From Octopus bimaculoides (lineage: Eukaryota): a stretch of DNA of 64,000 nt. The stretch is taken from assembly GCF_001194135.2 (NCBI RefSeq), contig NC_068990.1, forward strand, positions 10,491,716 through 10,555,715, written 5' to 3'. Of this stretch, positions 10,460 to 59,230 are shown piece by piece. A program made the position numbers and the translations under genes. The notes under the pieces are model-generated. The model worked only from the letters and a program-made list of their open reading frames with translations. It did no database searches and was not told the origin of the DNA. Position 1 is the stretch's first letter. The number at the start of each line of letters is the position of its first letter.

Positions 10460-10937
10460 ATTATGCATGCTCGACCAAGCGACATCGTGCATCGACATAA
10501 TATACGTAGCACCTTCGAACTTACATAGGCCAGTCAGTCCTTATCCCTCCTCAAGAATTATCATGTGCGTCACAAGATTTACCGCATACAATCTGCGGTT
10601 TACTATGAGGGAGTGAATGATTATTACAAATAAAAGGGTAAAGGATTATTAATTTATTAATAAATTAATGATTAATAATTTTTACCAACCACTTCGGTAT
10701 GTAAACACCATTATCGGTAAAGAACTTATTTAAAAGTTCTTATAAATTTATAAACATAATTATCGGATCAGCAACAGTTGCTTCATCACATACAGAAGTT
10801 CAGAAATAGCAGCTAAAGCGCTTGTGACACACATGGTAATTCTTGAGGAGGGATAAGGACTGACTGGCCCATGTAAGTTCGGAGGTGTTGCTTATATTAT
10901 GTTGATGCACGATGTCGCTTCGTCGAGCATGCATAAT
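10460..10937. mobile_element. MITE with ~117 bp terminal inverted repeats
   Basis: 10460-10576 (attatgcatgctcgaccaagcgacatcgtgcatc...cacaag) is the reverse complement of 10821-10937, with few mismatches. AT-rich non-coding interior; TA at both termini. Confidence 0.8.
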
Positions 10938-28391: not shown

Positions 28392-28422
28392 ATATATATA
28401 AAACAGAGTTTTGTGTATGTGT

Positions 28423-28620
28423 ATGTCTGTGTGTGTCTCTATGTCTGTGTGTGTCTCTATGTCTGTGTGTGTCTCTATGTCTGTGTGTGTCTCTATGTCT
28501 GTGTGTGTCTCTATGTATGTGTGTGTCTCTATGTCTGTGTGTGTCTCTATGTCTGTGTGTGTCTCTATGTCTGTGTGTGTCTCTATGTCTGTGTGTGTCT
28601 CTATGTCTGTGTGTGTCACT
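28423..28620. repeat. 18-bp minisatellite x11 (ATGTCTGTGTGTGTCTCT)
   Basis: Tandem units; source of the HRHRDT/VCVSMS pseudo-ORFs. Confidence 0.95.
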
Positions 28621-29515
28621 ATGTCTCGTGTGGTGCGTGCGTTCATTATGTATTCGAAAATTGAGTTGCTGATTTTGACGCATGCATTATCAAAAGATTC
28701 AGTAATCTTTCAGCTACCAAATGAGGTTTTTTTTTTTTTGCACAACTATTCTTTACTACAAATATAACTTCGAAAACGAGGTCTGGTCGCAGAATTTTGA
28801 GGTACTTTTCGAGCAATGTTTGGATTTGCTTCTGATCTACGTTGATAATATTTTTAAATGCACCAATGTACTAGAAGTGTTATGAGTGCATTTGCGATGC
28901 ACAAAACCTATTTGTCAACGGAAAATTGCAAAACAAAACATGCTTTTCTAGAAAAAAACATTGGTATATTTTCCGTCAATTATGACCTTTGTGTCACAAC
29001 TAAACTTCTACTGTGAACGTCTTCAGTATTCTATGATTAAACAATGTGTTTGAGGTATTGTGATATCATTCATTTTTTTGCACAAAGCCCTATTTTTGAA
29101 CAGAAATTTGCCTTATGAAACGTGTTTTGGGCATAATTATGAATGCTTCTATCATTACTACTGAAAATAATTTGTCCATGTAGATTTTCTTAGTAGCAAA
29201 CGACTCAGGAATGCTGAACGAGCGTTTTCAGGTTTAAATTCAGCAAAATTTTCGCAGGGTTTAAGCATAGGGAGAGACTATATTCGTTTAATTGTGGCAA
29301 AGACGTGAAGCAATGACTGAAATCTTTCGAGCTATTTTGCCTTTAACATTTCACTCTTTATTCAACCCAATTTTTGCAAAGTTGACTATTGTTATTAGTA
29401 TATAGTCATGCCTATTATTCATCCCATAAACGGCAAAGTTCGATTTTGCTACAATCTTCCTGTTTGTCACAGTCGTTTAGCGCGTACTATCATGCAATAG
29501 AAACAAATGTCTGAC

Positions 29516-29730: not shown

Positions 29731-29994
29731 NNNNNNNNNNNNNNNNNNNNNNNNNNNNNNNNNNNNNNNNNNNNNNNNNNNNNNNNNNNNNNNNNNNNNN
29801 NNNNNNNNNNNNNNNNNNNNNNNNNNNNNNNNNNNNNNNNNNNNNNNNNNATATATATGTATGTATATATATATATGTGTGTATATATATATACAACGAG
29901 AAACAATATCTGCCTCTTTTTATAGAAACAAAAGGGATTATAAGACTTCAAATAAAGAGCTCAAATACAAATGAAACGAAGATAAAGAAACATA

Positions 29995-32040
29995 GGTTAT
30001 AGAACAAACATTAAATCTGGGTCTACGACTTTACATACAACACCAACCCTCAAACATTTATTCATGTATTAAAATCACCATGGTTCCCAAACACATAAAA
30101 TGAAATACATATACATAAAATCACAGAAGATAAAAATCTACAATCGAATAAAATAGAAATAGAATGGCCTATCAAAAAGTTGAATATAAACGGCTAAAAA
30201 TCCAAAACTACCAAAACACCTAATAGACAAATATAAAATAAGTAAAGGGGAAAACAAAATAAAATAAAATAAAGGTCCACCAACTAAAAAAGTTTCATCA
30301 GGCAATTAAAATATTTTTAAAAATTAAAGCTTTTTTCTTATTTGAAAAACATTTGGAAAAAGTATTTTATTTCCCTCTTACAAGTATGTCTAAAGTTCAT
30401 ATGCAAACAGACTTCCACAGGTCAAATTCACATGCATCTTGAAGAACGTCTTTTACTCCCCTCACACAAGAACGTCCAAAAGTTCATAATAAGCAGACTT
30501 CACGGGTCAGATTCAACATTCACATATATCTATGGCCATTTCCGGAGCTCACCGTCCGGTTTTCGTCCACCTTTTTGAAAGTGTATAATTAAAGTAGATG
30601 TAATAAAATTGTTTAGCGTTACGAGGATTTGAAACCGGCGAGGTTGAATTTCTGTTAACTACAGCAACTTGAATGTTTTGCAATAGACTTTTTCTTTTTT
30701 TAGAAAATTTGGGATCTTTTTTAAAACGGGGGCCACATTTTTCATTAATGTTTTACGTAGTGCTTTTGGTACCGAAAGACTTCCAAACTTCGTATACTTA
30801 TCTATTTTGTGTTATAGAACAGAAAAATATTTTTGTATTTGAATTTATTTCATGTAAAAAATTGTCTTATTTCGATAATTTCAACCAATCACTGACGTCC
30901 ATTCAGCCGATATACATTAAGTGCCGACTACATAAACAAACGATTCTTCGTTTTATTTGCTTTTTTCATTTTAAATTTGCTTTAACCCTAACCCTAACCC
31001 TAACCCTAACCTTAACCCTAACTCTAACCCTAGGGTTAGGGTTAGGGTTAGAGTTAGGGTTAGGGTTAGGGTTAATTGTTTCAGAATCGTTTGTTTATGT
31101 AGTCGGCACTTAATGTATATCGGCTGAATGGACGTCAGTGATTGGTTGAAATTACAGAAATACGACAACTTTAACATGGAATAATTTATGGATTTCTTTT
31201 TTTTTTAAGAAGACTAAGAGAAAAAGATGTTTTATATGACACATTCTACCAGTGATCCAAGTTTCAAAGTGTTTCGTTAATGAAAAATGTGGCCCCCGTT
31301 TTAAAAAAGATCCAAAATTTGGACTGGGCCGCTGATGGTTTTTTTCTTTTCAATCATATAAGCTTTTCATACAAAAAAATTTGATCTGTGCGTGTTTCCT
31401 GATTCCTCTTTATCCTGATGAGAAGGTCATTACCGTGATACACTGTAGTGTAAATAAACTGCGGTGGTGAGCTCTCGAAATGGCCATATATATATATGTG
31501 AATGTGGAATTTCACCTATGAAGTCTGCTTATTATGAACGTTTGGAAGTACTTGGGGGAGGGGAGTAAAAAACGTTTTTCAAGATGTATGTGAATTTGAC
31601 CTGTGGAAGTCTGTTTACATATGAACTTTAGACGAACATATATGAGGGAAGAAAAAGGCTTTTATCAAATGTTTTTCAAATATTTAATTTTTTTTTTAAA
31701 TTGAAAAGGAATATTTAAAATATATTTTAATCGTCTGATAAAACTTTTTTAGTTGGTGGGCATTTATTTTATTTTATTTTATTTTCACCTTTACTTATTT
31801 TACGTTTAACTATTAGGATTTTTGGTAGTTTTGAATTCTTAGCTGTTTATATTTAACATTTTAATAGGCCGTTCTATTTCTCTTTTATTCGATTGTATAT
31901 TTTTACCTTCTGTGATTTTATGTATATATATTATTTTATGTGTTTTTCAACCATGGAGATTTTTATACATGATTAAATGTTTGAGGGTTGGTGTTGTATG
32001 TTAAGTTGTTGACCCAAATTTAAATGTTTGTTCTATAACC
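29995..32040. mobile_element. ~2 kb layered palindrome (fold-back element) centred on telomeric repeats
   Basis: The outer arms (29995-~30580 vs ~31470-32040) start ggttatagaacaaacatt and end aatgtttgttctataacc. There are perfect 37-bp (30712-30748/31277-31313) and 72-bp (30876-30947/31083-31154) inverted blocks; centre of symmetry 31031/31032. Confidence 0.85.
30983..31074. repeat. Interstitial telomeric repeat, (TAACCC)n followed by (GGGTTA)n
   Basis: Eight TAACCC-type units, then seven GGGTTA-type units; variant TAACTC/GAGTTA on both arms. Confidence 0.95.
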
Positions 32041-32081
32041 AATGCTGCTTTATATATATAATATATATATATATATATATG

Positions 32082-32189
<108 letters not shown>

Positions 32190-32202
32190 CATATATACAT
32201 AA

Positions 32203-32883
32203 ATATATATACCAGACGTTCAACACAAATCGACATAGAAAACCTAATACAAGTTCAACACAGCAACACACCTTCCCAGAAAATACTGCCGTACGTATCC
32301 ACATGCAACCACCAAAACAAAAAATCCTTCACCATCATCTCCCAAAATATACCAATGCTACATAAGGACCCCGAATTAAAGGAAATCTTACACATATATA
32401 AAATCATTAAAAGCCACAAACAACCGACATCACTAAAAAAGATCCTCACAAAGGCAAAATTAATTTCTAAAATAACGGATGCAAATTGAAAAAATGTGAT
32501 CGACCAAATTCCGCCACATGCCCGAACCTTCTAAAAGGATCAGAAATTCTTTTCAAAGGGGGACAAAAATTCAAAGCCAAATCTGATTTTACTTGTGCCT
32601 CAGAAAACCTGATTTATGTTATAAGATCCTCGGGCTGCCACCAAAACTACGTAGGGTCCACGGGAGTATTGCCCAGACGCAGATGCCCTCTGCACCGACA
32701 GCAGAATGCATTCCCAGAATACAGAATGATACCCTTTTGTGAACACTTTGAGAAATGCGCAAAGCAACTGCTACCACAATCTCTAATCACTCCATTTTCT
32801 CGATGTACCATTGCAACACCAACACTAGTTTGATTAAATAAAGAAACCTCCTTCATTGAAAATATAAGCCAAACTTAAACCAT
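32203..32883 (+). mobile_element. Penelope-like retroelement 3' part with GIY-YIG endonuclease (degenerate)
   Basis: Translation: LPYVSTCNHQNK..HKDPELKEIL..IIKSHKQPTSLKKILTKAK, then KCDRPNSATCP..FTCASENLIYVIRSSGCHQNYVGST..RRC.LHRQQ..PFCEH, ending KETSFI..YKPNLN. This is the typical PLE C-terminal order. Confidence 0.85.
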
Positions 32884-38761: not shown

Positions 38762-39994
38762 GAGGTTGTACCAAAAGCTTCTTGGACGAGTTTTGTTTAA
38801 AAAAATAACTTATTCACCTAAGTTTTAACATCTACTTCGAAATATATACACCGGTCCCAACTATACACCGGTCTCAGCGTTCCTGCTACTTTTGGAATCC
38901 GCTTTAAAAGTCATTTTCCTTCAGTGATTCTCTCCCAGCATCTCGACAACAGTGTTAAAACGGCGACCTTAGAGCTACATGTTCATCTTGGGGAAGACAT
39001 GGAAGTCCACAAGTACTATATCTGGCGAATAGGGTGACTTTGGAAGCCGTAACTTGTTGTTTTTGGCGAGAAACCCACGAGTGAGGAGGGCACGGTGGCA
39101 GGGTGCATTGTCACACGCCACAGATTGAATCGCTTTCGCCGAATGTTCTCCCACCTATACTTCAAAACGTCGTAGCAAAACTCTCGAATGCCGGCCCTAT
39201 GTGAGGAGTCCTCCATGCACAATACAGCGGATGTAAACAGAAATGATGAGCATACTCTTGATTGAGCTGCAGCGCTGTCGTGCCTCCTTCAGTCCTGGAG
39301 AGGGTGGGTTCCTCCATTATGAGGACTACTGTTTTGTCTACGTGTCGTATCCGTTGACCCAACTCTCGTTACCGGAGTTGATCCTCGACATGAAGGATGG
39401 TCCTGAGCGGCACGCTGATGGAAATCTTGACAGACCTCCACGCGGTGTTCTTTATTCCTAGTGGTTAAAAGGCAATGGTAAAGAATGGCAGACATTGGGA
39501 TTATCTGCAAGAACCAATAAGACAGACCAACAATATTGGCAGTGTCGTTGATTGTCGTCCAACGATCCCCATACACAAGCTGTTGAATTTCCCCCACATT
39601 TCCAGGGGTGACGCTTGTGGCAGATCTTCCAGGTGACTCATCATTTTGCAGCTACTTTCTTCTGCTTTTGAATTGCCTGTGCCACTGAAAACATTGTGCA
39701 CGACCCATTCTCTCGTCACGGAAACTTTGCCGAAATATTATATATTATCTCTGTATCAGACTTACCAAGTTTAACGAAAGATTTCACATTGGATCTGTAT
39801 TCCAAGTTCCTGCCCGGGAAAAAGCTCGCACACGAGGGTATACACGGGATCAGTTCGAAACGTAGACACAGCGATGTCACTCACAACACTGTCACATGAT
39901 GAACACTGCTAGTTCTCACTGTGCACACACTCATCTGCTGTCATCAGTTGACCCTCTACACAACTTGTCCAGAAACGTTTTTGATACTACCACG
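38761..39994 (-). mobile_element. Full-length degenerate mariner transposon (~1.23 kb)
   Basis: Imperfect TIRs cgaggttgtaccaaaagcttcttggacgagtt / aacttgtccagaaacgtttttgatactaccacg, TA-flanked on the left. Minus-strand transposase remnants: SRINSGNESWVNGYDT*TKQ (GDESW) and IRRKRFNLWR..HPIRQI. Confidence 0.85.
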
Positions 39995-40878: not shown

Positions 40879-41750
40879 NNNNNNNNNNNNNNNNNNNNNN
40901 NNNNNNNNNNNNNNNNNNNNNNNNNNNNNNNNNNNNNNNNNNNNNNNNNNNNNNNNNNNNNNNNNNNNNNNNNNNNNNNNNNNNNNNNNNNNNNNNNNNN
41001 NNNNNNNNNNNNNNNNNNNNNNNNNNNNNNNNNNNNNNNNNNNNNNNNNNNNNNNNNNNNNNNNNNNNNNNNNNNNNNNNNNNNNNNNNNNNNTATATAT
41101 ATTGCTTTGCGTCTCTCTCTCTTAATCCATTCATTCACTCGGTCTCTAATTCTTGTGCGACGATCATTGCTATGGTTACGTTTCTCGATTCTCTGAAATC
41201 AACTGCAACATCAACGACTACGCTATATAAGCAAATTATGCGATAGTAACAGCCGCCTAATCAACAACGATGACGACCACAAATAGTGTCAATGGCGACA
41301 TTAAACACAAGAATAATAGTCATGTTATTTACAATTCTGCCGTGGACATTAATTCGCTCTTAATTTGCTTCGGGTTGTTTTTGTTTGTACGCCACAGCGA
41401 TACAAACTTTATACTAGATAATGAAGTGAGAAGGTAAATATAAATAAGATGATGATGACGACGACGACGATGTTGATGATGACGATGATGGTGATAATAG
41501 AGATGATGATAATTACGATGATAAGAATAATAATAGATGTTTTAGAGTTTTACTACGAGTAAAAGCCTGTAGCAAAAATAACCAGAGTTGTTATAGTCAC
41601 CTCCATAGGTAATAATGTGGAAATTATATTTAGAACTGCTTGAGTGACAGTAGAAAATAGGGAACCAAAACTTCACTAATCTATACTATAAAAGGAAAAC
41701 GAACAAGGTTATCGCGCTGGCAAAATAGGGATTTGCATGGTAAATTTTAT

Positions 41751-42040
41751 ACGGTGCCGTGTTTTACAATCTTGTAAATAACAATAATGGTATTTTTATA
41801 TAAGCTTAAAGATTATGGTGATCACTGCAAAGACTAAGAAAAATAGATGACATATAAGATGACGTATAAACCCTCGGATGTCACGCGGATACAAGAAAGA
41901 AGCCTTTTTTTCTGTCGTGGGCTGATATGCTCCTTTATTAGGCTATTTTCCTAAGTCATTGCACGCTGATAGCAATAATATTTAAGCTTATATAAAAATA
42001 CCATTATTATTATTTATAGGATTGTGAAACACGGCGCCGT
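41751..42040. mobile_element. ~290 bp MITE with ~65 bp TIRs
   Basis: acggtgccgtgttttacaatcttgtaaataacaataatggtatttttatataagcttaaa (41751-41810) is mirrored by tttaagcttatataaaaataccattattattatttataggattgtgaaacacggcgccgt (41981-42040). Confidence 0.8.
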
Positions 42041-42642
42041 TTCAAAAGACCATTCGCAACGAAAGCATATAGTTCTTAAATTTACGTATCATAATAGGCA
42101 TTACGAATTTACATCTTTTTACGTTGAAAGTACTTTTCTGAAGATAAGCTTTTCTTATTCTTATGTCTCAACGCTACTGCTATCTAGCATCTTCGGATGA
42201 TCTCTACTCAACCGCTACACAACTGCTACTCGACTGCTACTCAACCGCTACTCAACACTTTCTTTGTTCGGCACTACGGTCACAACACAGAGGGGGACGA
42301 TACTAGGAGAGACACAACACTAAAGGTGGTGTTGAAACATGGCTGCAGTCAAATGACTGAAACATATAGAAAAGAAATTAGAGAAAATGCATTTTCATTT
42401 ATATGCATGCAAATGTACATCCACACAGATTCAAAAATTTATATAGATAAAATCATTGTGTGTCAAATCATTAAGTAATCGTGCTGACAAGGAAAATTAT
42501 ACATGATCATACAACCAATAAAAAGTGTTGACAAATATGTTCCCACTGTCATATTCTATGCTGATATCCTATCAGAGTTTCTCTTCAACACAGGCAGAGA
42601 CACACAGAGATGCACACACACACAGACACACACAGACATACA

Positions 42643-52422: not shown

Positions 52423-53657
52423 TTGGGTCATCCCATAAATAATGCGGTCTTTTTTATACTTCTTTTATTTTTCAAGATGAATATACATTAAGTTCTTTTT
52501 TAATCTAAAATCTACTCTCCTTCGTTTTCTACACTGCTCTTCCATCTATCTGGTAGACATGCAAGGACCCTCTTCCGAAACTCACTTGTCTGTGACGAAA
52601 AATACTCCTCCGGTAAGTACTGTTCTGACCTAATTCACAGAATTCATATTTTCTCGTCTAAATGATTTTGAAGATTGCGGAATATATGATAATCAGATTA
52701 GGCAAAGTCCGGCAAATATGGTAGGTGGGGAATCGCTTCCCATTCAAACTGCTCCAGCCTTTGGAATATCATCCTCGCTGTATGTGGCCGAGCATTATCG
52801 TGATGGAAGAACAACTTTCGTGTTGAAACCAAAGATGGTCGTTTTCCTTGTAGAGCTGACTTAAGCTGCTGAAGCTGCTCGCAGTAGATTCCCTTTGCTA
52901 TCGTTTTGTTTGAGTTAAAATTTGAAAGTGGACTAAAACGTTCATATCCCATCAAACAGATAACAACAACTTACGTGGTTGAAGATCTTTAGCCTGGGCT
53001 GTCGCTGTTTCTCGCTTGACATCTTTATAGAGAACCCATTTCTCGTCATCAGTCACTATTCGATCACAAAAAGGTTCATTGATGAGACATGACAGCAAAG
53101 AGGAACACATAATCACTTTCTCTGAGCGATTAGTTTATGAGGAACCCATTGACTGAAATTTCTGGTTTTACCGATGACATACAAGCTTCGATGAATGGCC
53201 GAATAACGAAATCCAAGCTTCTCTTCTTGTCCCTCAAAAGCTACGATGGTATTTTGCTCCACCAGAGTTTGCAGGACATCCTCGAAGACGTGGTTCTTCT
53301 CCTAGGTTGTAGTTTCCGGCTCAGAATTTCTGGAACCAACGTTGAGACAGGCATACGCATATCGTCATATCCCCATATACTACATTGATAATCCTCACAC
53401 TTCTCGTTGCATTGTTGCCTTTATTAAAATCTGAAAGAAAAATATGCCAACTATTCTCGTTTGTCACTTCTATTATAGCTTTGATAAAATAACTTGCTAA
53501 AATCAAACTGTATTCTTCAAAACTTGCACAAAGCATAAGTATAAGGTAAAATTACTATCCCCGTTTTTAGCAAGTTGATGCAAGTAGTTTACTCCGTCCC
53601 CCTCCGACTTTTAGTCCATGTAATTGAAGTAACCGCCTCATTTATGGTATGACCCAA
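52423..53657 (-). mobile_element. Full-length degenerate mariner (DD34D) transposon (~1.23 kb)
   Basis: TIRs ttgggtcatcccataaataatgcggt / accgcctcatttatggtatgacccaa, TA at the right end. Minus translation DRIVTDDEKWV, FHHDNARPH, HLPYLPDFA, SDYHIFRNLQNHLD. Confidence 0.9.
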
Positions 53658-53677: not shown

Positions 53678-53720
<43 letters not shown>

Positions 53721-53916
53721 TAAATGAAATGAGACAACAAAGCCAACGCTGTGTGGAATTTTCAGGACATTTATAAAGAGAAAGAAATATTTTCAAATCA
53801 CTCTGTATAATATAATTTTTAATATATTTGGCAAAGAGTGTTTCTTCGTTCGTAATTAATTAGGCATGTAAAAAAAAAATAAAGAGCTACATTTAAACTT
53901 AATTCAAAGTATAATT

Positions 53917-54977
53917 AATTATAAGGAGTGTTTGACTCAGTTCAAATACTTTAAATTCCATGCAGGAGTAACAGTAGTTATTTATATTCAGTATGTTCTC
54001 TTTCAACTACGATCATCTATGGCGACTGAATTCGTGTAATGACATCAGTTCTCAAATATTGTTGTGAATGAATTGATGAAAATTAAGTGTCCTTTAGTCG
54101 AAAACTGAATATACCTTAGCCTGGATACGAATTTTATGATTATTTCAATCCAAAAGCGAGAAAAATATCCTGCAACGAAACTAGATTATACTCAAGTGTT
54201 TCGGAAAGAGAGGAATTGAAGTGAACTAAGGCACGTCATTAAGCTGTATCTGTGTATTTAGGTAAATTGATTCTTTTCTAATATTTTCTTACTTTTCGTA
54301 TTTCAGTTATAAAATAAAATGTATTTATTATAAATGTCCTGAAAATTTCATGCAGCCTTGTCTTTCTTGTCTCATTTTATTTAACGTATACATGATCACA
54401 CTAGACCCGCGTATGAATCCTCATTCGTATTATTATCGAACGGAAAATGTAACTAACTTCCATAGCACTTGTGTTTGTGTGTGTGTGAGTACTAGAATAT
54501 GTATAGATGTGTACGTGTTGAGAGAATATCACATTAAATTCAGAATAACACATTCGCTCTACGAATATTATTGATTTCATACCTGAAATGCGAAAAGCAA
54601 AAAAAAAAAAAAAAAGAAAAGAATGCATTTACCTAAATACATAGGTAGAGCTTCGTGAAATGCCTCAGTTCACTTCAATTCATCTATTTCAGAAACGTTT
54701 CAGAAGAATCTAGTTTCGTTGCAAGACATTTCTCTCGCTTTGGGATTGAAGTAATCAACAAATGAGTATCCAAGCAAAGGCATATTCGTTTTTCGACTAA
54801 AGGACATTTAACTTTCTTCAAATAATTCACAACAATATTTGAGAACTGATGTCATTACACGAATTGAATCGCCATAGATGATCGGAGTTGAGATAGAACA
54901 TGCTTAATATAAATAACTACTGTTACTCCAGCATGGTATTTAAAGTATGTGAACTGATTCAAAAAGCCCTTACAATT
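53917..54977. mobile_element. Fold-back element with ~350 bp inverted arms (53917-54266, 54628-54977)
   Basis: gatcatctatggcga.t.aattcgtgtaatgacatcagttctcaaatattgttgtgaat...gtcctttagtcgaaaa...tgcaacgaaactagatt...gtatttaggtaaa is mirrored on the right arm. Confidence 0.85.
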
Positions 54978-55271
54978 ATATGTTAGATTTAAATTTACCT
55001 TTTATCTTTTACATAACTAATGAATTATCAACGAAGAAAAACTCTTTGCCATATATGTGCAAAATTATATTATACAGATAGATTTGCAAATATTTCTTTT
55101 TCTTATTAAAACAATACTACTAATATTATGTAAATAATATATTTACTAGCGCCTTCACTACTGTGTTATATTTTATGTGCTGTCGGGGTATCGACACTAC
55201 TGCACGCAATGCAGTAAACATATTTATGCATTTGTTATATTAACTATTAGATTCTAAGAATACGTTTTTTA

Positions 55272-55563: not shown

Positions 55564-57142
55564 ATAAATTCTATGTTATATGTATTATGATTACATAGCA
55601 TGATCCGATTTCAAAACATGATCTGATTTCACTATCATTATATTCATTTCGTCTCAGTTATTTCTAGCCTTTCCTAGTCAAATTCGAGCCGAGTTAATAA
55701 TCCTCTTAAACATTTAAGCCGATAGTTTGATTTAAACCTCAGTTTCATTGTTCATCAGTTATTGTAGTTGTGAGCTAATTTAACAAACACTTTATTGTCA
55801 TTGTCATCATCTCATTTTAAGGTGGTTACGTATACTTTGGAGGGGGGGGGGCATCTGGCTGTTGTACTTATCAGTTAGAACAGCATATTTGGTATTCATC
55901 ACCAATAACAAAAATTTTGATTTTAAATATCATAGTATAGTTTCAATTTTTGTTAGTTTTAAAGATTCGTCTGTCATTATATGGATTCCACATCAATATG
56001 TTTGATAGTATTAATACAACACTCGCAAATGTTCTAATATGTTGAATTATAGTTGCCAACATAAAATTTTCAGATAACCTAAATGTTTTGAATATATAGT
56101 CTCATATTTTCTGCTGCTTTTATTTTGGAATCTTCGACAATTTCCCTCCCGGCAATCTGTATTCAAATTATTATTGATACAGCGTAAGGAGTACAATGAT
56201 ATGTGTATTGTTATATAGTGCTACGTTCTTCGAGCTGAACAAACTAAACAGCAGAGGTCAAATAAATATTGCTATTGTTTGAGTAGGATATATTGCCTTT
56301 TAACAAAAAGGATAGCTCGTAGACAAGATGCGTAGCTTCTGTTAAGATGCAAGTATGACTTTTACAATGCTTCACTTTGATACACTCATCATTACTTTTC
56401 CTATCCTTACTATATATACATACGAGCATGCATGTATACATACATATATGCATTCATGTATACTCGCATACATACATACAGATATAAATACATACATACA
56501 TACATACATACACACGCACATATATACATACGTACATACAGCTTACATATACATCTTGAAACTTTGTGTCACCCTGATCTAATATTAGCAATTGTGAGAC
56601 TACACGATAATACAGGGTGGCTAAATTTTGTTAGGAAATAATTTTCTACTAACATTAGTAGTAAAACAGACATAATCGACTCCAAATCTGTCGCCATTGA
56701 TATAATGAACTGTAGCAAATATAATGAATGCTATAAAACCAATATATTGAACTGTAATGCAAATTCAGTATAAAGAAAACAGAAGCAAAAGGAAGACAAT
56801 GGTTTACACTATTCAAATTATACTTTATATCATATTATTTCAATTAACAGCACACACATACGGCAAAATGGAAAACGACTTGTGGTCTGAGTAGTTACGG
56901 TATGTATGAAGAGCGAGAATGATGTGATATGTATGTTGATAGTGTTGTAGCTGCCACTTAGCTTCACATGGTTCTTGACACATGTTGAGGGAAATTTTTA
57001 ATTAATACAGATTGTTACCTTTTAAAATGTATGGCCATATATCCTGTGACGTTGCTGATAATTTCATTACAATATTTATGACATTGTACCACGTTTACGT
57101 TTTATTTGATTCTGTTTTTAATATTTGTAAATATTATAAATG

Positions 57143-57144
57143 AT

Positions 57145-57197
<53 letters not shown>

Positions 57198-57212
57198 AAA
57201 TAATAATAAAGA
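57143..57212. repeat. (TAA)n microsatellite at the 5' flank of the Dong-like element
   Basis: Direct run. Confidence 0.9.
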
Positions 57213-59230
57213 AAGCAAAAATGATAAGATACGACCGAAAAATGAAGGGTTACCACCATAATAGGTTATTCGGAGTAGATCAAAAGAGATTCTATAAAGA
57301 AATAAATGGAGAGTGTACAGAAGAACAGTCGATACCAGATAACATTGAAAGTCAAACGTTTTGGAGTGATATCTGGAGAAAAGACAGGGAGCACAAGAAG
57401 GATGCCGAATGGTTGCAAGAACTGAAAAAAACACTAGTCTGTCCAAAACAGGCAGAACTATTCATTTCAGTTGGAGAAGTGAAGGAAATCGGCCAAGAAA
57501 ATGAGCAACTGGAAGGCTCCGGGACCAGATGAACGAAGTTCAAGGCTACGGGATCAAAAGATTTGGTAAATGTCCTGCACGAATAGCTTCGCAACTCAAA
57601 ACCTCGTTAAATGCCGACCAAGTGATACCAGAATGGTTGACATTGGGTAGGACAGTGATGTGCCTGAAAAACATCGGAAAAACATCGGAAAAGGCAATAC
57701 GGTGGACAATTACAGGCCGATATCCTGTTTGCCGTTTATGTGGAAGTTATTGACTGGAATACTCGCAGAGTCAAAGTACGAACATCTGGAAAAACGGATT
57801 CCTGACACTTGAGCAGCTGGGCTGCAAGCGTAAGTGCAGAGGTGCCAAGGATCAACTCCTGATAGACAAAACTGTACTCAGAAACTGCAAGAGGAGGAAA
57901 CGTAGCTTAGCCATGTCATGGATCGACTATCGTAAGGCGTACAATATAATCCCACATTCTTGGATTATGGAGTGTATGAACCTGTTTCGTATTGCATCGA
58001 ATGTTGAGCGATTGCTGGGAAAAAGTATGGCGAATTGGAGGATGGACCTGACAGCATACGGAAGAAGTTTAGGGAAAGCAGAAATTAGGAAGTGTATCTT
58101 CCACGGGGACTGCCTGTCCCCACTGATCTTTGTACTGTGCTTGATACCACTAACACTGATTCTGAGGAAAGCAAAAGCTGGGTATGTATTCAAAAGCCGC
58201 CAGCNNNNNNNNNNACTGATTCTGAGGAAAGCAAAAGCTGGGTATGTATTCAAAAGCCGCCAGCAAAAAGTCAACCATTTGTTATTCATGGATGACCTAA
58301 AACTTTAAAGATGGAGCCCAAGCCAGTTCCCTCGTTGATACAGTGTATACCTTCATTGCTGATATCAGAATGGAGTTCGGTCTGAGAAAGTGTGGTGTGC
58401 TAGTCTTGAAGAGAGGCAAAATAAAATGTATGGACAGGCTAACGATACCGTCGGCAGAGGTAATGAATCAGATAGAAGAGACAGGCTATAAGTATTTGGG
58501 GATTTTGGAAATGGACAAATTGATGGAGAAAGAAATGACAGGTAGAGTACTTGCACAAATTTAAGGTGGACTACTTGTACAGACTGAGACTGATCCTTAA
58601 GTCGAAATGAAACGGACGGAATAAGATCGAAGCTTTCAACACCTGGGCGGTTTCACTCCTTAGATATGGAGCAGGGGTAATTGCATGGACAGTAGACGAA
58701 GTAAACAGGAAGACAAGGAAGTTGCTAACTATATATGGGTCACTACTCCGAAAAAGTGACACAGACAGACTGTATGCTCCAAGAAAAAGAAGGGGAAGAG
58801 GACTTATTGGATGCGAACACAGCATTAGAGCAGAAGAAAACAATATAGCATGGTATGTAAAACATGCCACAGAACCGCTATTATTAGACGTATGAAGGTC
58901 AGACTTGTGTAGGATGAACGATTGCTAAGACAAAGCACTATACAGGAAATTAAAAACGAATGAAACTGAAAATAGGTGGGTAAAGAAAAGTGTGCATGGT
59001 CAATTTCATAGAGATGTTGAACATAAGACAGAGAAAAAAGATGGTTGTGGATGACTAAAAGTGATTTAAAACCGGAAACGGAGGCTCTAATCTGTGCTGC
59101 CTAAGAGCAAGTACTAAGCACAAACTACAAAACATACCGAATAAACAACACAGCAGAAAGTGTTAAGTGCAGAATCTGTGGACAAAACGGTGAAACCGTA
59201 TCGCATATTACCAGCCAATATACGCCACTA
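57213..59230 (+). mobile_element. Truncated, frameshifted Dong/R4-like non-LTR retrotransposon (RT and start of the CCHC region)
   Basis: Motifs in order: NRLF.VDQKRFYKEI; NWKAPGPD; [10 protein letters not shown]; [17 protein letters not shown]; [15 protein letters not shown]; [13 protein letters not shown]; [10 protein letters not shown]; HLLFMDDLKL; MEFGL.KC; YKYLGILE; RLY.PRK..GRGL; CRICGQNGETV.HI. Confidence 0.92.

What the first reader, a model, noticed from the sequence alone, without database searches (positions are those of the whole stretch)
29995..32040. 2-kb layered palindrome built around back-to-back telomeric repeats
Seen: the block is symmetric about 31031/31032 (TAACCCT|AGGGTTA). 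Its centre is (TAACCC)n then (GGGTTA)n, the opposite orientation to a telomere-telomere end fusion. The variant unit TAACTC/GAGTTA occurs on both arms but at different distances from the centre, so both arms share a template and the centre was trimmed unequally. Outward, matching blocks (72 bp perfect, 37 bp perfect, ~590 bp imperfect outer arms) alternate with unrelated segments. The terminal motif GTTATAGAACA recurs internally at ~30811. No TSD or ORF is evident. Inference: a non-autonomous fold-back element using telomere-type repeats at its hinge (options: two Helentron/HINE-like ends head-to-head, a Crypton-like palindromic element, or nested elements). It could extrude a cruciform or long hairpin with telomeric G-rich and C-rich strands at the tip.
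Basis: partly seen in the sequence, partly recalled or inferred. Interest (0 to 1): 0.8.

Follow-up and report, generated by a model that had tools for sequence, protein, structure and literature searches.

The report
Decayed palindrome hinged on telomere repeats
A real 2-kb non-coding DNA palindrome whose centre is two back-to-back runs of the telomere repeat; it most likely arose when a DNA end folded back on itself and was copied, and whether it is one copy of a mobile repeat family could not be tested here.

Summary
Bases 29995-32040 (possibly 29982-32053) form an imperfect palindrome centred at 31031/31032, with (TAACCC)8 followed by (GGGTTA)7 at the hinge. These are the only telomere-type repeats in the 64-kb window.

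The arms match over about 560 bp at the outside (88% of aligned bases), a 44-bp block (98%) and a 106-bp block (93%, with 72 perfect bases). One "unrelated" pair (93/89 bp) is in fact homologous at about 70%. Only the 151/145-bp pair is truly unrelated.

The hinge has the "outward" orientation, and its junction CCCTAGGG is the commonest junction reported for outward telomere fusions in human tumours that use the ALT pathway. There it is explained by a (CCCTAA)n 3' end folding back on TA microhomology and being copied. I adopt that origin.

The element has no ORF with homologues, no Rfam family and no tRNA. Only a TA target-site duplication is possible, and it is uninformative. There is no second copy in the window. 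The Helitron/Helentron, Crypton and Kolobok hallmarks that I could test are absent.

It is a moderately interesting variant of known fold-back structures, not a demonstrated new transposon class.

The parts
29982..29994 (.). Possible 13-bp outward extension of the left arm (pairs with 32041-32053, 10/13)
   Evidence: Self-BLAST of the window extends the arm pair to 29982/32053; termini shown
29995..30553 (+). Left outer arm (A), 559 bp; terminus GGTTATAGAACAAAC
   Evidence: Pairs with 32040-31466, E=4e-160; 489 matches, 65 mismatches, 8 gap events
30554..30704 (.). Left segment L1 (151 bp), no detectable homology with R1
   Evidence: Global alignment against the reverse complement of R1 gives z=1.7; direct orientation gives z=0.1
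30705..30748 (+). Left block B (44 bp, 43/44 identical to its partner; 37 bp perfect)
   Evidence: (I15)
30749..30841 (+). Left segment L2 (93 bp), a diverged homologue of R2; holds the internal copy of the terminal motif (TGTTATAGAACA, 30810-30821)
   Evidence: z=7.6, 70% over 63 aligned columns; motif found
30842..30947 (+). Left block C (106 bp; 72 bp perfect at 30876-30947). Contains CCAAT (30885-30889), TGACGTC (30893-30899) and the TATA-like ATATACATTAA (30910-30920), in the order of a promoter pointing at the hinge
   Evidence: the motifs were read from the sequence, and a promoter function is inference only
30948..30981 (.). Left spacer L3 (34 bp) between block C and the repeats; its partner R3 is only 7 bp (indel)
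   Evidence: Alignment
30982..31031 (+). C-strand telomere repeats (TAACCC)8, with variants TAACCT and TAACTC
   Evidence: TRF; pattern search with 0 expected by chance
31032..31075 (+). G-strand telomere repeats (GGGTTA)7, with variant GAGTTA. The junction ...AACCCT|AGGGTT... gives a 16-bp perfect palindrome with no spacer
   Evidence: (I20)
31076..31082 (.). Right spacer R3 (7 bp)
31083..31187 (-). Right block C' (105 bp); mirror motifs GACGTCA (31131-31137) and ATTGG (31141-31145)
31188..31276 (-). Right segment R2 (89 bp), a diverged homologue of L2 with a degenerate copy of the terminal motif
31277..31320 (-). Right block B' (44 bp)
31321..31465 (.). Right segment R1 (145 bp), unrelated to L1
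31466..32040 (-). Right outer arm (A'), 575 bp
32041..32053 (.). Possible 13-bp extension of the right arm; it abuts the (TA)n/(GA)n/(GATA)n microsatellite at 32051-32211

Best explanation
The block is the decayed product of one fold-back (hairpin) duplication whose axis lay in an interstitial telomere-repeat tract.

Proposed sequence of events:
1. A stretch X of about 1 kb ended in (CCCTAA)n, read 5'->3'.
2. A break or a stalled fork inside that tract left a 3' end ...CCCTA.
3. The end snapped back on the self-complementary TA/CTAG of the repeat and primed synthesis along its own complement.
4. Replication of the hairpin gave X-(CCCTAA)n(TTAGGG)n-revcomp(X), with the spacer-free junction CCCTAGGG.
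5. The palindrome then decayed. It accumulated about 12% substitutions between the arms, many small indels, unequal slippage of the two repeat arrays and a 27-bp indel next to the hinge. One segment of about 150 bp was replaced.
6. The inner blocks stayed, or were kept, more alike, probably by arm-to-arm gene conversion.

The element encodes nothing and I assign it no present function.

What is shown: the architecture, the orientation, the junction and the pattern of decay. What is inferred: the fold-back event itself, and every step after it.

Open sub-question (roughly even odds): the fold-back may have happened at this locus, for example by replication template switching with a second switch back. 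Alternatively it happened once in the master copy of a dispersed, non-autonomous long-inverted-repeat ('foldback-type') element, and this is one insertion of that element.
For: 1. The orientation 5'-(CCCTAA)n(TTAGGG)n-3' excludes telomere-telomere fusion. It also excludes telomerase healing of the inner arm ends, which would put (TTAGGG)n at the 3' end of each arm (logic applied).
2. The junction ...CCCTAGGG... is the commonest junction class of 'outward' telomere fusions (22% of pure ones). The authors explain it by fold-back of a (CCCTAA)n 3' end on TA microhomology, fill-in and replication of the hairpin (PMC10762111).
3. The inverted homology continues from the repeats into about 1 kb of unique flank on both sides. 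It includes L2/R2, which looked unrelated. A copied fold-back predicts this.
4. Both repeat arrays carry the same rare variant unit TAACTC.
5. There is no spacer at the axis, and the central palindrome is 16 bp and perfect.
6. Substitutions are spread evenly along the outer arms (0.84-0.92 per 50 columns, apart from one indel-rich patch) with transitions roughly equal to transversions (32:33). That looks like neutral decay from once-identical arms.
7. Fold-back inversions through single-strand hairpins are established in yeast and human germline and somatic genomes (abstracts of PMC7467729, PMC3907307 and PMC11724301, listed).
Against: - L1 and R1 (151 and 145 bp) are unrelated yet nearly equal in length and symmetrically placed. 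Simple decay does not predict this. It fits two different subfamily copies, or a nested insertion, better.
- Identity is heterogeneous: 88% in the outer arms, 95% in blocks B plus C (Fisher p=0.023), and 70% in L2/R2.
- A chromosomal fold-back normally gives very large palindromes with loss of the distal arm. A 1-kb arm needs a second switch, or an extrachromosomal or transposon intermediate, and I have no evidence for either.
- The precedent for outward junctions is somatic and tumour-associated, not germline and interstitial.
- This is a single locus from a gapped short-read scaffold (an N run at 29731-29850 lies 145 bp from the left end).
Confidence: 0.5

Rival explanations
1. It is one copy of a mobile, non-autonomous foldback-type (long terminal inverted repeat) DNA transposon family. 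The two arms are its terminal inverted repeats, the conserved blocks and the repeated terminal motif are transposase-binding sites with constrained spacing (as in IR/DR elements), and the telomeric hinge is inherited from the master copy. This overlaps with the best explanation on how the hinge arose. It differs in claiming mobility and constraint.
For: - Both ends are sharp, symmetric termini.
- The terminal motif TTATAGAAC recurs in direct orientation inside the left arm (30812), degenerately in the right arm, and 75 bp outside the left end (29920). With one mismatch allowed there are 7 hits in the window against 2 expected.
- Conserved blocks alternate with poorly conserved stretches of matching length (151/145 and 93/89 bp).
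- The same 64-kb window holds three more inverted-repeat structures (53770-55110 at 83%, 41745-42047, 10460-10937). Long inverted-repeat elements therefore look common in this genome.
- A TA duplication is compatible with the extended ends.
Against: - No other copy of any part exists in the window.
- There is no informative target-site duplication. TA is trivial next to a (TA)n microsatellite.
- No transposase remnant is present.
- The arms are not built of tandem subrepeats, unlike the Drosophila FB element.
- Copy number could not be tested.
Confidence: 0.3
2. The arms are two independent full-length copies (different subfamilies) of a dispersed repeat of about 1 kb that ends in (TAACCC)n. 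The second copy inserted tail to tail into the repeat tail of the first. The repeat would be, for example, a retroposon with a telomere-repeat tail, as in the telomere-primed Athena-type Penelope-like elements, or an element that targets telomere-type repeats.
For: - A mosaic of conserved and unrelated segments, with L1 and R1 unrelated, is what two subfamily variants would show.
- Arm identity of 84-88% is typical of two old copies.
- The unit 5'-X-(CCCTAA)n-3' has the polarity of an RNA that could prime on a telomeric G-overhang (my knowledge of Athena-type Penelope-like elements).
- A Penelope-like fragment lies 430 bp away.
Against: - Priming on the repeat tail of a resident copy gives head-to-tail arrangements, not tail-to-tail (strand logic).
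- The exact symmetric register CCCT|AGGG and the shared TAACTC variant would both be coincidences, roughly 1/6 and 1/10.
- There are no telomeric repeats at the outer ends, no hammerhead ribozyme or any Rfam hit, no reverse transcriptase in the arms, and no similarity to the neighbouring Penelope-like fragment.
Confidence: 0.08
3. It is a nest of palindromic elements. An older element (outer arms plus a 296-bp unique centre made of L1 and R1) received a younger 616-bp palindromic element (30705-31320) exactly in its middle.
For: - It explains why L1 and R1 are unrelated, and why the inner part is more alike (95%) than the outer part (88%).
- The inner 616 bp are homologous in inverted orientation along their whole length.
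Against: - The insertion would have hit the midpoint within about 3 bp (151 vs 145), a chance of about 0.5-2% without a targeting mechanism.
- There is no target-site duplication at 30705/31320 or at 30842/31187 (read).
- It still needs a separate origin for the telomeric hinge.
Confidence: 0.06
4. It is an assembly artefact: a false fold-back join in a gapped short-read scaffold.
For: The window has ten N runs, one of them 145 bp from the left end. The hinge is a low-complexity perfect palindrome.
Against: - Artefactual fold-backs give identical arms. Here the arms differ by 65 substitutions, more than 8 indels and a 150-bp unrelated segment. The two repeat arrays also differ in length and in the position of the variant unit.
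- The arms cannot be two true chromosome ends joined by mistake, because the repeat polarity relative to each arm is the reverse of a terminal telomere.
Confidence: 0.03
5. It is a functional hairpin-RNA locus. The perfectly conserved promoter-like blocks (CCAAT, TGACGTC, TATA-like) drive convergent transcription into the hinge and yield a telomere-repeat hairpin of about 45 bp, a source of telomeric small RNAs.
For: - The motif order and spacing point at the hinge on both arms, and conservation is highest there (72 bp perfect).
- The hinge folds as a perfect stem, and several microRNA-precursor models match it weakly (39 bits against gathering scores of 74-90).
Against: - The motifs are short and could be chance.
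- All Rfam matches are far below threshold and simply reflect any hairpin.
- There are no expression data, and there is no evidence of conservation in other species.
Confidence: 0.03

Closest known systems
'Outward' telomere fusions (ALT-associated) made by intra-telomeric fold-back inversion (Muyas et al. 2024, PMC10762111)
   Same: The orientation is the same, 5'-(CCCTAA)n(TTAGGG)n-3'. The junction is the same, ...CCCTAACCCTAGGGTTAGGG..., with TA microhomology. The proposed hairpin-and-copy mechanism also predicts inverted flanks.
   Different: Those events are somatic, found in human tumours and cell lines, sit on telomeric or extrachromosomal fragments and consist of pure repeat. This one is in a germline assembly, is interstitial, has only 8 and 7 repeat units, carries about 1 kb of unique inverted flank on each side and is old (about 12% arm divergence).
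Fold-back inversions / inverted duplications through single-strand hairpins (yeast PMC7467729; human PMC3907307; short templated inverted insertions PMC11724301)
   Same: A 3' end folds back on short self-complementarity and is extended, giving a head-to-head duplication.
   Different: The known products are either very large (chromosome-arm scale, with terminal deletion and often a spacer) or very short (5-34 bp). A spacer-free palindrome with 1-kb arms embedded between normal flanks is an intermediate size that needs a second switch or a mobile intermediate.
Foldback-type transposons with long terminal inverted repeats (Drosophila FB, C. elegans Tc4, Galileo; from my own knowledge, not tested against their sequences)
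   Same: They are kilobase-scale elements that are almost entirely two inverted arms, are non-coding in most copies and form hairpins.
   Different: Those elements have defined target-site duplications, many copies and, for FB, arms built of tandem subrepeats. None is known to me to have telomere repeats at the hinge. None of these features could be shown here.
Telomere-bearing transposons TBE1 (Oxytricha) and Tel-1 (Tetrahymena), and telomere-targeting Paramecium Helitrons (discussed in PMC13085455)
   Same: Mobile elements physically joined to telomere-type repeats.
   Different: There the repeats sit at the outer ends or flank the element, with normal telomere polarity or on both sides in one polarity. 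Here they are only at the inner hinge, in the reverse polarity, and the outer ends have none.
Short interstitial telomeric sequences inserted during double-strand-break repair, including TERC-ITS (PMC7215372, PMC8537989; abstracts seen)
   Same: A short internal run of the native telomere hexamer.
   Different: Those are single-orientation tracts added by telomerase to a 3' end. The polarity here is wrong for that on both arms, and the tract is mirrored.

Membership tests
Outward telomere-repeat fold-back junction | C-strand repeats followed by G-strand repeats on one strand | tested here: met
   (TAACCC)8 at 30983-31032, then (TAGGGT)7 at 31031-31074
Outward telomere-repeat fold-back junction | Junction with TA/CTAG microhomology (CCCTAGGG) and no spacer | tested here: met
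   ...TAACCCT|AGGGTTA..., a 16-bp perfect palindrome; the same junction is the commonest class in PMC10762111
Outward telomere-repeat fold-back junction | Sequence beyond the repeats is an inverted copy of the other side | tested here: met
   About 1 kb of inverted homology on each side
Outward telomere-repeat fold-back junction | Arises at terminal telomeres in cells using the ALT pathway, on DNA fragments | not testable with these tools
   Here the tract is interstitial in a germline scaffold, and there is no information on its history
Foldback-type / long-TIR non-autonomous DNA transposon | Long terminal inverted repeats making up nearly the whole element, with no coding capacity | tested here: met
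   The only ORF longer than 100 aa has no Pfam hit and no homologue
Foldback-type / long-TIR non-autonomous DNA transposon | Target-site duplication flanking the ends | tested here: inconclusive
   No 3-10 bp direct repeat at 29995/32040 or at 29982/32053. Only TA is possible, and the right end abuts (TA)n
Foldback-type / long-TIR non-autonomous DNA transposon | Multiple copies at unrelated loci | not testable with these tools
   None in the 64-kb window. Exact 24-mers are absent from the metagenome and prokaryote collections. ORF-based searches were empty, but the source genome is evidently not represented
Drosophila FB-like foldback element | Arms composed of tandem subrepeats | tested here: not met
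   TRF finds no tandem array in the arms apart from the hinge repeats
Helitron / Helentron / HINE | 5'-TC and CTRR-3' termini (Helitron), or insertion within TT with short asymmetric terminal inverted repeats (Helentron); no long terminal inverted repeats | tested here: not met
   The ends are A|GGTTATAG...CTATAACC|A with 560-bp inverted arms. The definitions are as summarised in PMC13085455
Helitron / Helentron / HINE | Rep/helicase ORF, or similarity to one | tested here: not met
   No ORF with Pfam hits in the element
Crypton | Tyrosine-recombinase ORF and no terminal inverted repeats | tested here: not met
   No such ORF, and the element is all inverted repeat
Kolobok | TTAA target-site duplication | tested here: not met
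   No TTAA at either boundary
Telomere-bearing transposons (TBE1 / Tel-1 type) | Telomere repeats at the outer termini with natural polarity | tested here: not met
   No telomeric repeat at 29995 or 32040, or anywhere else in the window. The repeats are at the hinge with reverse polarity
Penelope-like element (including the telomere-primed Athena type) | Reverse transcriptase (with or without GIY-YIG) ORF | tested here: not met
   No such ORF in 29995-32040. The GIY-YIG fragment at 32471-32830 shares no sequence with the arms
Penelope-like element (including the telomere-primed Athena type) | Hammerhead ribozyme motif in the repeat | tested here: not met
   No hammerhead hit even at E<=10 with permissive filters
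Penelope-like element (including the telomere-primed Athena type) | 3' end carrying reverse-complement telomere repeats | tested here: inconclusive
   Each arm read toward the hinge ends in (TAACCC)n, which has the right polarity. Nothing else supports an RNA-derived unit
microRNA / hairpin-RNA gene | Match to a curated family at its gathering score | tested here: not met
   Best hits are mir-1258 at 39 bits (gathering score 74) and mir-7973 at 39 bits (gathering score 90), both on the repeat hairpin itself

The most novel reading that the evidence does not exclude
The palindrome is one copy of a dispersed family whose functional core is the conserved inner part: blocks B and C plus the telomere-repeat hinge. 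Such a foldback element would be generated through a telomere-repeat hairpin and would perhaps propagate through one. Its convergent promoter-like blocks would transcribe the hinge into a telomeric-repeat hairpin RNA.
Probability: 0.08. Interest if true: 0.8.

Novelty: new variant of a known kind. Interest (0 to 1): 0.4.

Why it matters
If the fold-back reading is right, this is a fixed germline example, in an invertebrate, of the 'outward' telomere-repeat junction so far described in human ALT tumours. It comes with the copied flanks still attached, so the hairpin-and-copy mechanism can be read directly from the sequence.

It would also show that short interstitial telomere tracts can seed kilobase palindromes, which are known sources of instability, hairpin RNAs and new inverted-repeat elements.

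If it turns out to be a multi-copy family, it would be a foldback transposon with a telomere-repeat hinge. My literature searches found no description of such an element.

Tried and rejected
1. Other copies in the window: BLASTN of the element against all 64 kb found only itself. No further inverted layers lie beyond the flanking microsatellites.

2. Reaching copies elsewhere through translated ORFs: the inner ORF (30673-30981) and the outer-arm ORF (30321-30575) had no homologue. The neighbouring Penelope-like fragment also found nothing in that index, although it has 543 relatives in the exhaustive search. The source genome is therefore not represented there, and these nulls say nothing about copy number.

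3. An exact 24-mer of block C against the metagenome and prokaryote genome collections gave 0 hits.

4. The exact outward junction against viral contigs gave 0 hits. A viral-terminus origin was not pursued.

5. The exact outward junction in metagenomes gave 13 loci. They are short (34-46 nt) telomere-like palindromes whose flanks are not palindromic beyond 17-24 nt, and they share nothing with this element. They are not relatives.

6. Rfam at the gathering threshold over the whole window, and at E<=10 over the element, found no real family, no hammerhead and no snRNA. ARAGORN found no tRNA-like head.

7. Segment inversion (flip/flop) as the reason for the unrelated segments: L1 and R1 are also unrelated in direct orientation.

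8. Telomerase healing, telomere fusion and misjoined chromosome ends were all rejected on repeat polarity.

9. A telomerase-RNA gene or a TERC-derived insertion was rejected. There are eight template-like repeats, and the arm homology runs through the promoter-like block, which an RNA copy could not contain.

10. Fetching cephalopod DNA through relatives of the Penelope-like fragment gave only contigs of 0.9-2.6 kb, which were of no use.

11. Paper searches for the element's own sequences found no match for blocks B and C or for the terminus.
Full report
**What is there**

The window is AT-rich (34% G+C) and rich in microsatellites. It has ten N runs, so it comes from a gapped scaffold of a eukaryote. 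I could not verify the species. TTAGGG is the only experimentally determined cephalopod telomere motif (PMC13218726 and PMC6160780), and it is also the motif of many other animals.

Bases 29995-32040 form an imperfect palindrome centred between 31031 and 31032. From outside to centre, the left and right parts are:

| Part | Left | Right | Relation |
|---|---|---|---|
| Outer arms | 29995-30553 | 32040-31466 | 489 matches, 65 mismatches, 8 gap events; 88% of aligned bases, 84% counting gaps |
| L1 / R1 | 30554-30704 (151 bp) | 31321-31465 (145 bp) | no detectable similarity in either orientation |
| Block B | 30705-30748 | 31320-31277 | 43/44 |
| L2 / R2 | 30749-30841 (93 bp) | 31188-31276 (89 bp) | homologous, about 70% over 63 columns plus indels, z=7.6 |
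| Block C | 30842-30947 | 31187-31083 | 98/105, with a 72-bp perfect run |
| L3 / R3 | 34 bp | 7 bp | indel |
| Hinge | (TAACCC)8 | (GGGTTA)7 | |

They are not. The inverted repeat may also extend 13 bp further, to 29982/32053. Telomeric repeats occur nowhere else in the window, and none is expected by chance.

**What it is not**

- It encodes nothing. The only long ORF crosses the hinge, partly translates the repeat, and has no Pfam hit or homologue.
- No Rfam family reaches threshold. The weak microRNA-precursor hits (39 bits against gathering scores of 74-90) merely reflect the hairpin. There is no hammerhead ribozyme and no tRNA-like region.
- The ends (A|GGTTATAG...CTATAACC|A) lack the Helitron termini 5'-TC and CTRR-3', the TT target of Helentrons and the TTAA duplication of Kolobok. 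There is no tyrosine recombinase as in Cryptons.
- No 3-10 bp target-site duplication is present. TA is possible but trivial, because the right end abuts a (TA)n array.
- It is not an assembly fold-back. The arms differ by 65 substitutions, many indels and an unrelated segment of about 150 bp, and the two repeat arrays differ in length and in the position of the variant unit.

**The hinge is the informative part**

Read toward the centre, each arm ends in the C-rich strand. Three origins are excluded on polarity:
- Telomerase healing of an arm end would add the G-rich strand there.
- An end-to-end telomere fusion would read (TTAGGG)n(CCCTAA)n.
- True subtelomeres have the opposite polarity.

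A text search for the junction sequence found Muyas et al. 2024 (PMC10762111). That paper describes 'outward' telomere fusions, 5'-CCCTAA...TTAGGG-3', in tumours that use the ALT pathway. The most frequent junction there (22% of pure events) is ...CCCTAACCCTAGGGTTAGGG..., the junction seen here.

The authors' mechanism has four steps. A break in the repeat is resected. The ...(CCCTAA)n 3' end folds back on the self-complementary TA. Synthesis fills in the hairpin. Replication of the hairpin gives the outward junction.

This mechanism also predicts what is seen beyond the repeats, namely an inverted copy of the adjoining unique DNA. Both arrays carry the rare variant TAACTC, at unit 2 on the left and unit 4 on the right. 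That fits one array that was mirrored and then changed by slippage, although the chance of coincidence is about 0.1. Fold-back inversions through single-strand hairpins are well documented in yeast and in humans (PMC7467729, PMC3907307, PMC11724301).

**Best explanation**

One fold-back event took place at an interstitial (CCCTAA)n tract and was followed by long neutral decay. The decay left about 12% arm-to-arm substitutions with transitions roughly equal to transversions, spread evenly along the outer arms.

The inner blocks are more alike than the outer arms (95% against 88%, Fisher p=0.023). A 72-bp perfect run is unlikely at 88% identity (about 0.015 by my estimate). Some arm-to-arm gene conversion or constraint near the hinge is therefore likely.

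The weak point is L1/R1. These are two unrelated segments of nearly equal length at mirror positions. They would be more natural if the arms came from two subfamily variants, or if a younger 616-bp palindrome had inserted into the centre of an older one. The nested reading needs an insertion within about 3 bp of the midpoint and shows no duplication at its borders.

**Mobile or not**

This is unresolved.

In favour of a foldback-type non-autonomous transposon:
- The ends are sharp and symmetric.
- The terminal motif recurs in direct orientation at 29920 and 30812, and degenerately in the right arm.
- The spacing between the conserved blocks is preserved, as in IR/DR-type elements.
- The same window holds three more inverted-repeat structures, one of them 1.3 kb long with arms at 83%.

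Against it:
- There is no second copy in 64 kb.
- There is no informative duplication.
- There is no transposase remnant.

I could not reach the source genome. Two ORF-based searches and two exact-word scans were empty. The neighbouring Penelope-like fragment was equally invisible to the word-indexed search, although it has 543 relatives in the exhaustive one. These nulls therefore carry no weight.

A chromosomal fold-back normally produces huge palindromes. A 1-kb arm implies either a second template switch or a small extrachromosomal or transposon intermediate. That keeps the mobile-family reading at roughly even odds with a local event.

**Function**

I assign none. As a single strand, the inner 346 nt fold into a hairpin of -140 kcal/mol (z=-27). 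The axis is a 16-bp perfect palindrome without a spacer, so cruciform or hairpin formation is physically plausible.

Block C carries CCAAT, TGACGTC and a TATA-like element. Their order and spacing are those of a promoter pointing at the hinge, and they are mirrored on the other arm. Convergent transcription would give a telomere-repeat hairpin RNA. This rests on short motifs only and is the low-probability novel reading.

**Comparison and verdict**

In how it works, the closest known thing is the outward telomere fusion or fold-back inversion. The orientation, the junction and the inverted flanks were all tested and met. The size class, the interstitial germline setting and the age differ.

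In form it resembles foldback transposons, but the defining features of duplication and copy number could not be shown.

It is a new variant of a known kind and moderately interesting. A simple genome-wide BLAST and one orthologous locus would settle its nature.

Noticed in passing
window 32212-32870, ORF 32471-32830 (+): A 5'-truncated Penelope-like retroelement lies 430 bp to the right of the palindrome. Its C-terminal zinc-finger plus GIY-YIG endonuclease has 543 relatives, and the full-length ones (about 745 aa) carry RVT_1 plus GIY-YIG. The fragment starts right at the (GATA)n microsatellite. It has no sequence similarity to the palindrome.
   Followed up: yes
window 53770-55110: A second long inverted repeat has arms of about 505 bp at 83% identity and a spacer of about 335 bp. 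A 74-bp piece of its left flank, including the edge of a (TG)n array (53703-53776), is present in inverted orientation inside the spacer (54328-54401). A possible 3-bp ACA duplication flanks it. The arm divergence is similar to that of the telomeric palindrome.
   Followed up: partly
window 41745-42047 and 10460-10937: Two smaller MITE-like inverted-repeat structures: 80-nt arms at 86%, and 117-nt arms at 92% (the latter ends at an N run). No clear target-site duplication.
   Followed up: partly
window 52701-52970 (-) and 39292-39651 (-): Remnant of a mariner-type transposase. The first ORF has the motif HDNARPH and a weak Pfam Transposase_1 hit (E=5e-4, below the cut-off). The second looked like an N-terminal part by eye but has no Pfam hit.
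   Followed up: partly
window 57140-58892 (+): Three ORFs of 87-130 aa that look like retroelement remnants by eye. Pfam gave nothing meaningful, so this is unverified.
   Followed up: partly
window 29731-29850: A 120-bp N run flanked by (TA)n lies only 145 bp left of the palindrome, so the contig holding the palindrome starts at 29851. The structure is worth confirming with long reads.
   Followed up: no
L001-L013 (JGI metagenome contigs), e.g. L003 7922-7959, L001 3659-3772: The exact outward junction CCCTAACCCTAACCCTAGGGTTAGGGTTAGGG occurs in 13 metagenome contigs as short telomere-like palindromes of 34-46 nt. Most belong to one repeat family of an unknown organism of about 42% G+C. Two recurrent kinds of flank are joined in different combinations, sometimes with two junctions 42-62 bp apart. 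In L001 the motif sits between long ORFs in a gene-dense contig. These may be elements with telomere-like terminal inverted repeats that insert next to one another.
   Followed up: partly
window 28422-28632: An 18-bp minisatellite (TATGTCTGTGTGTGTCTC, 11.7 copies, 97% matches) lies 1.4 kb left of the palindrome.
   Followed up: no
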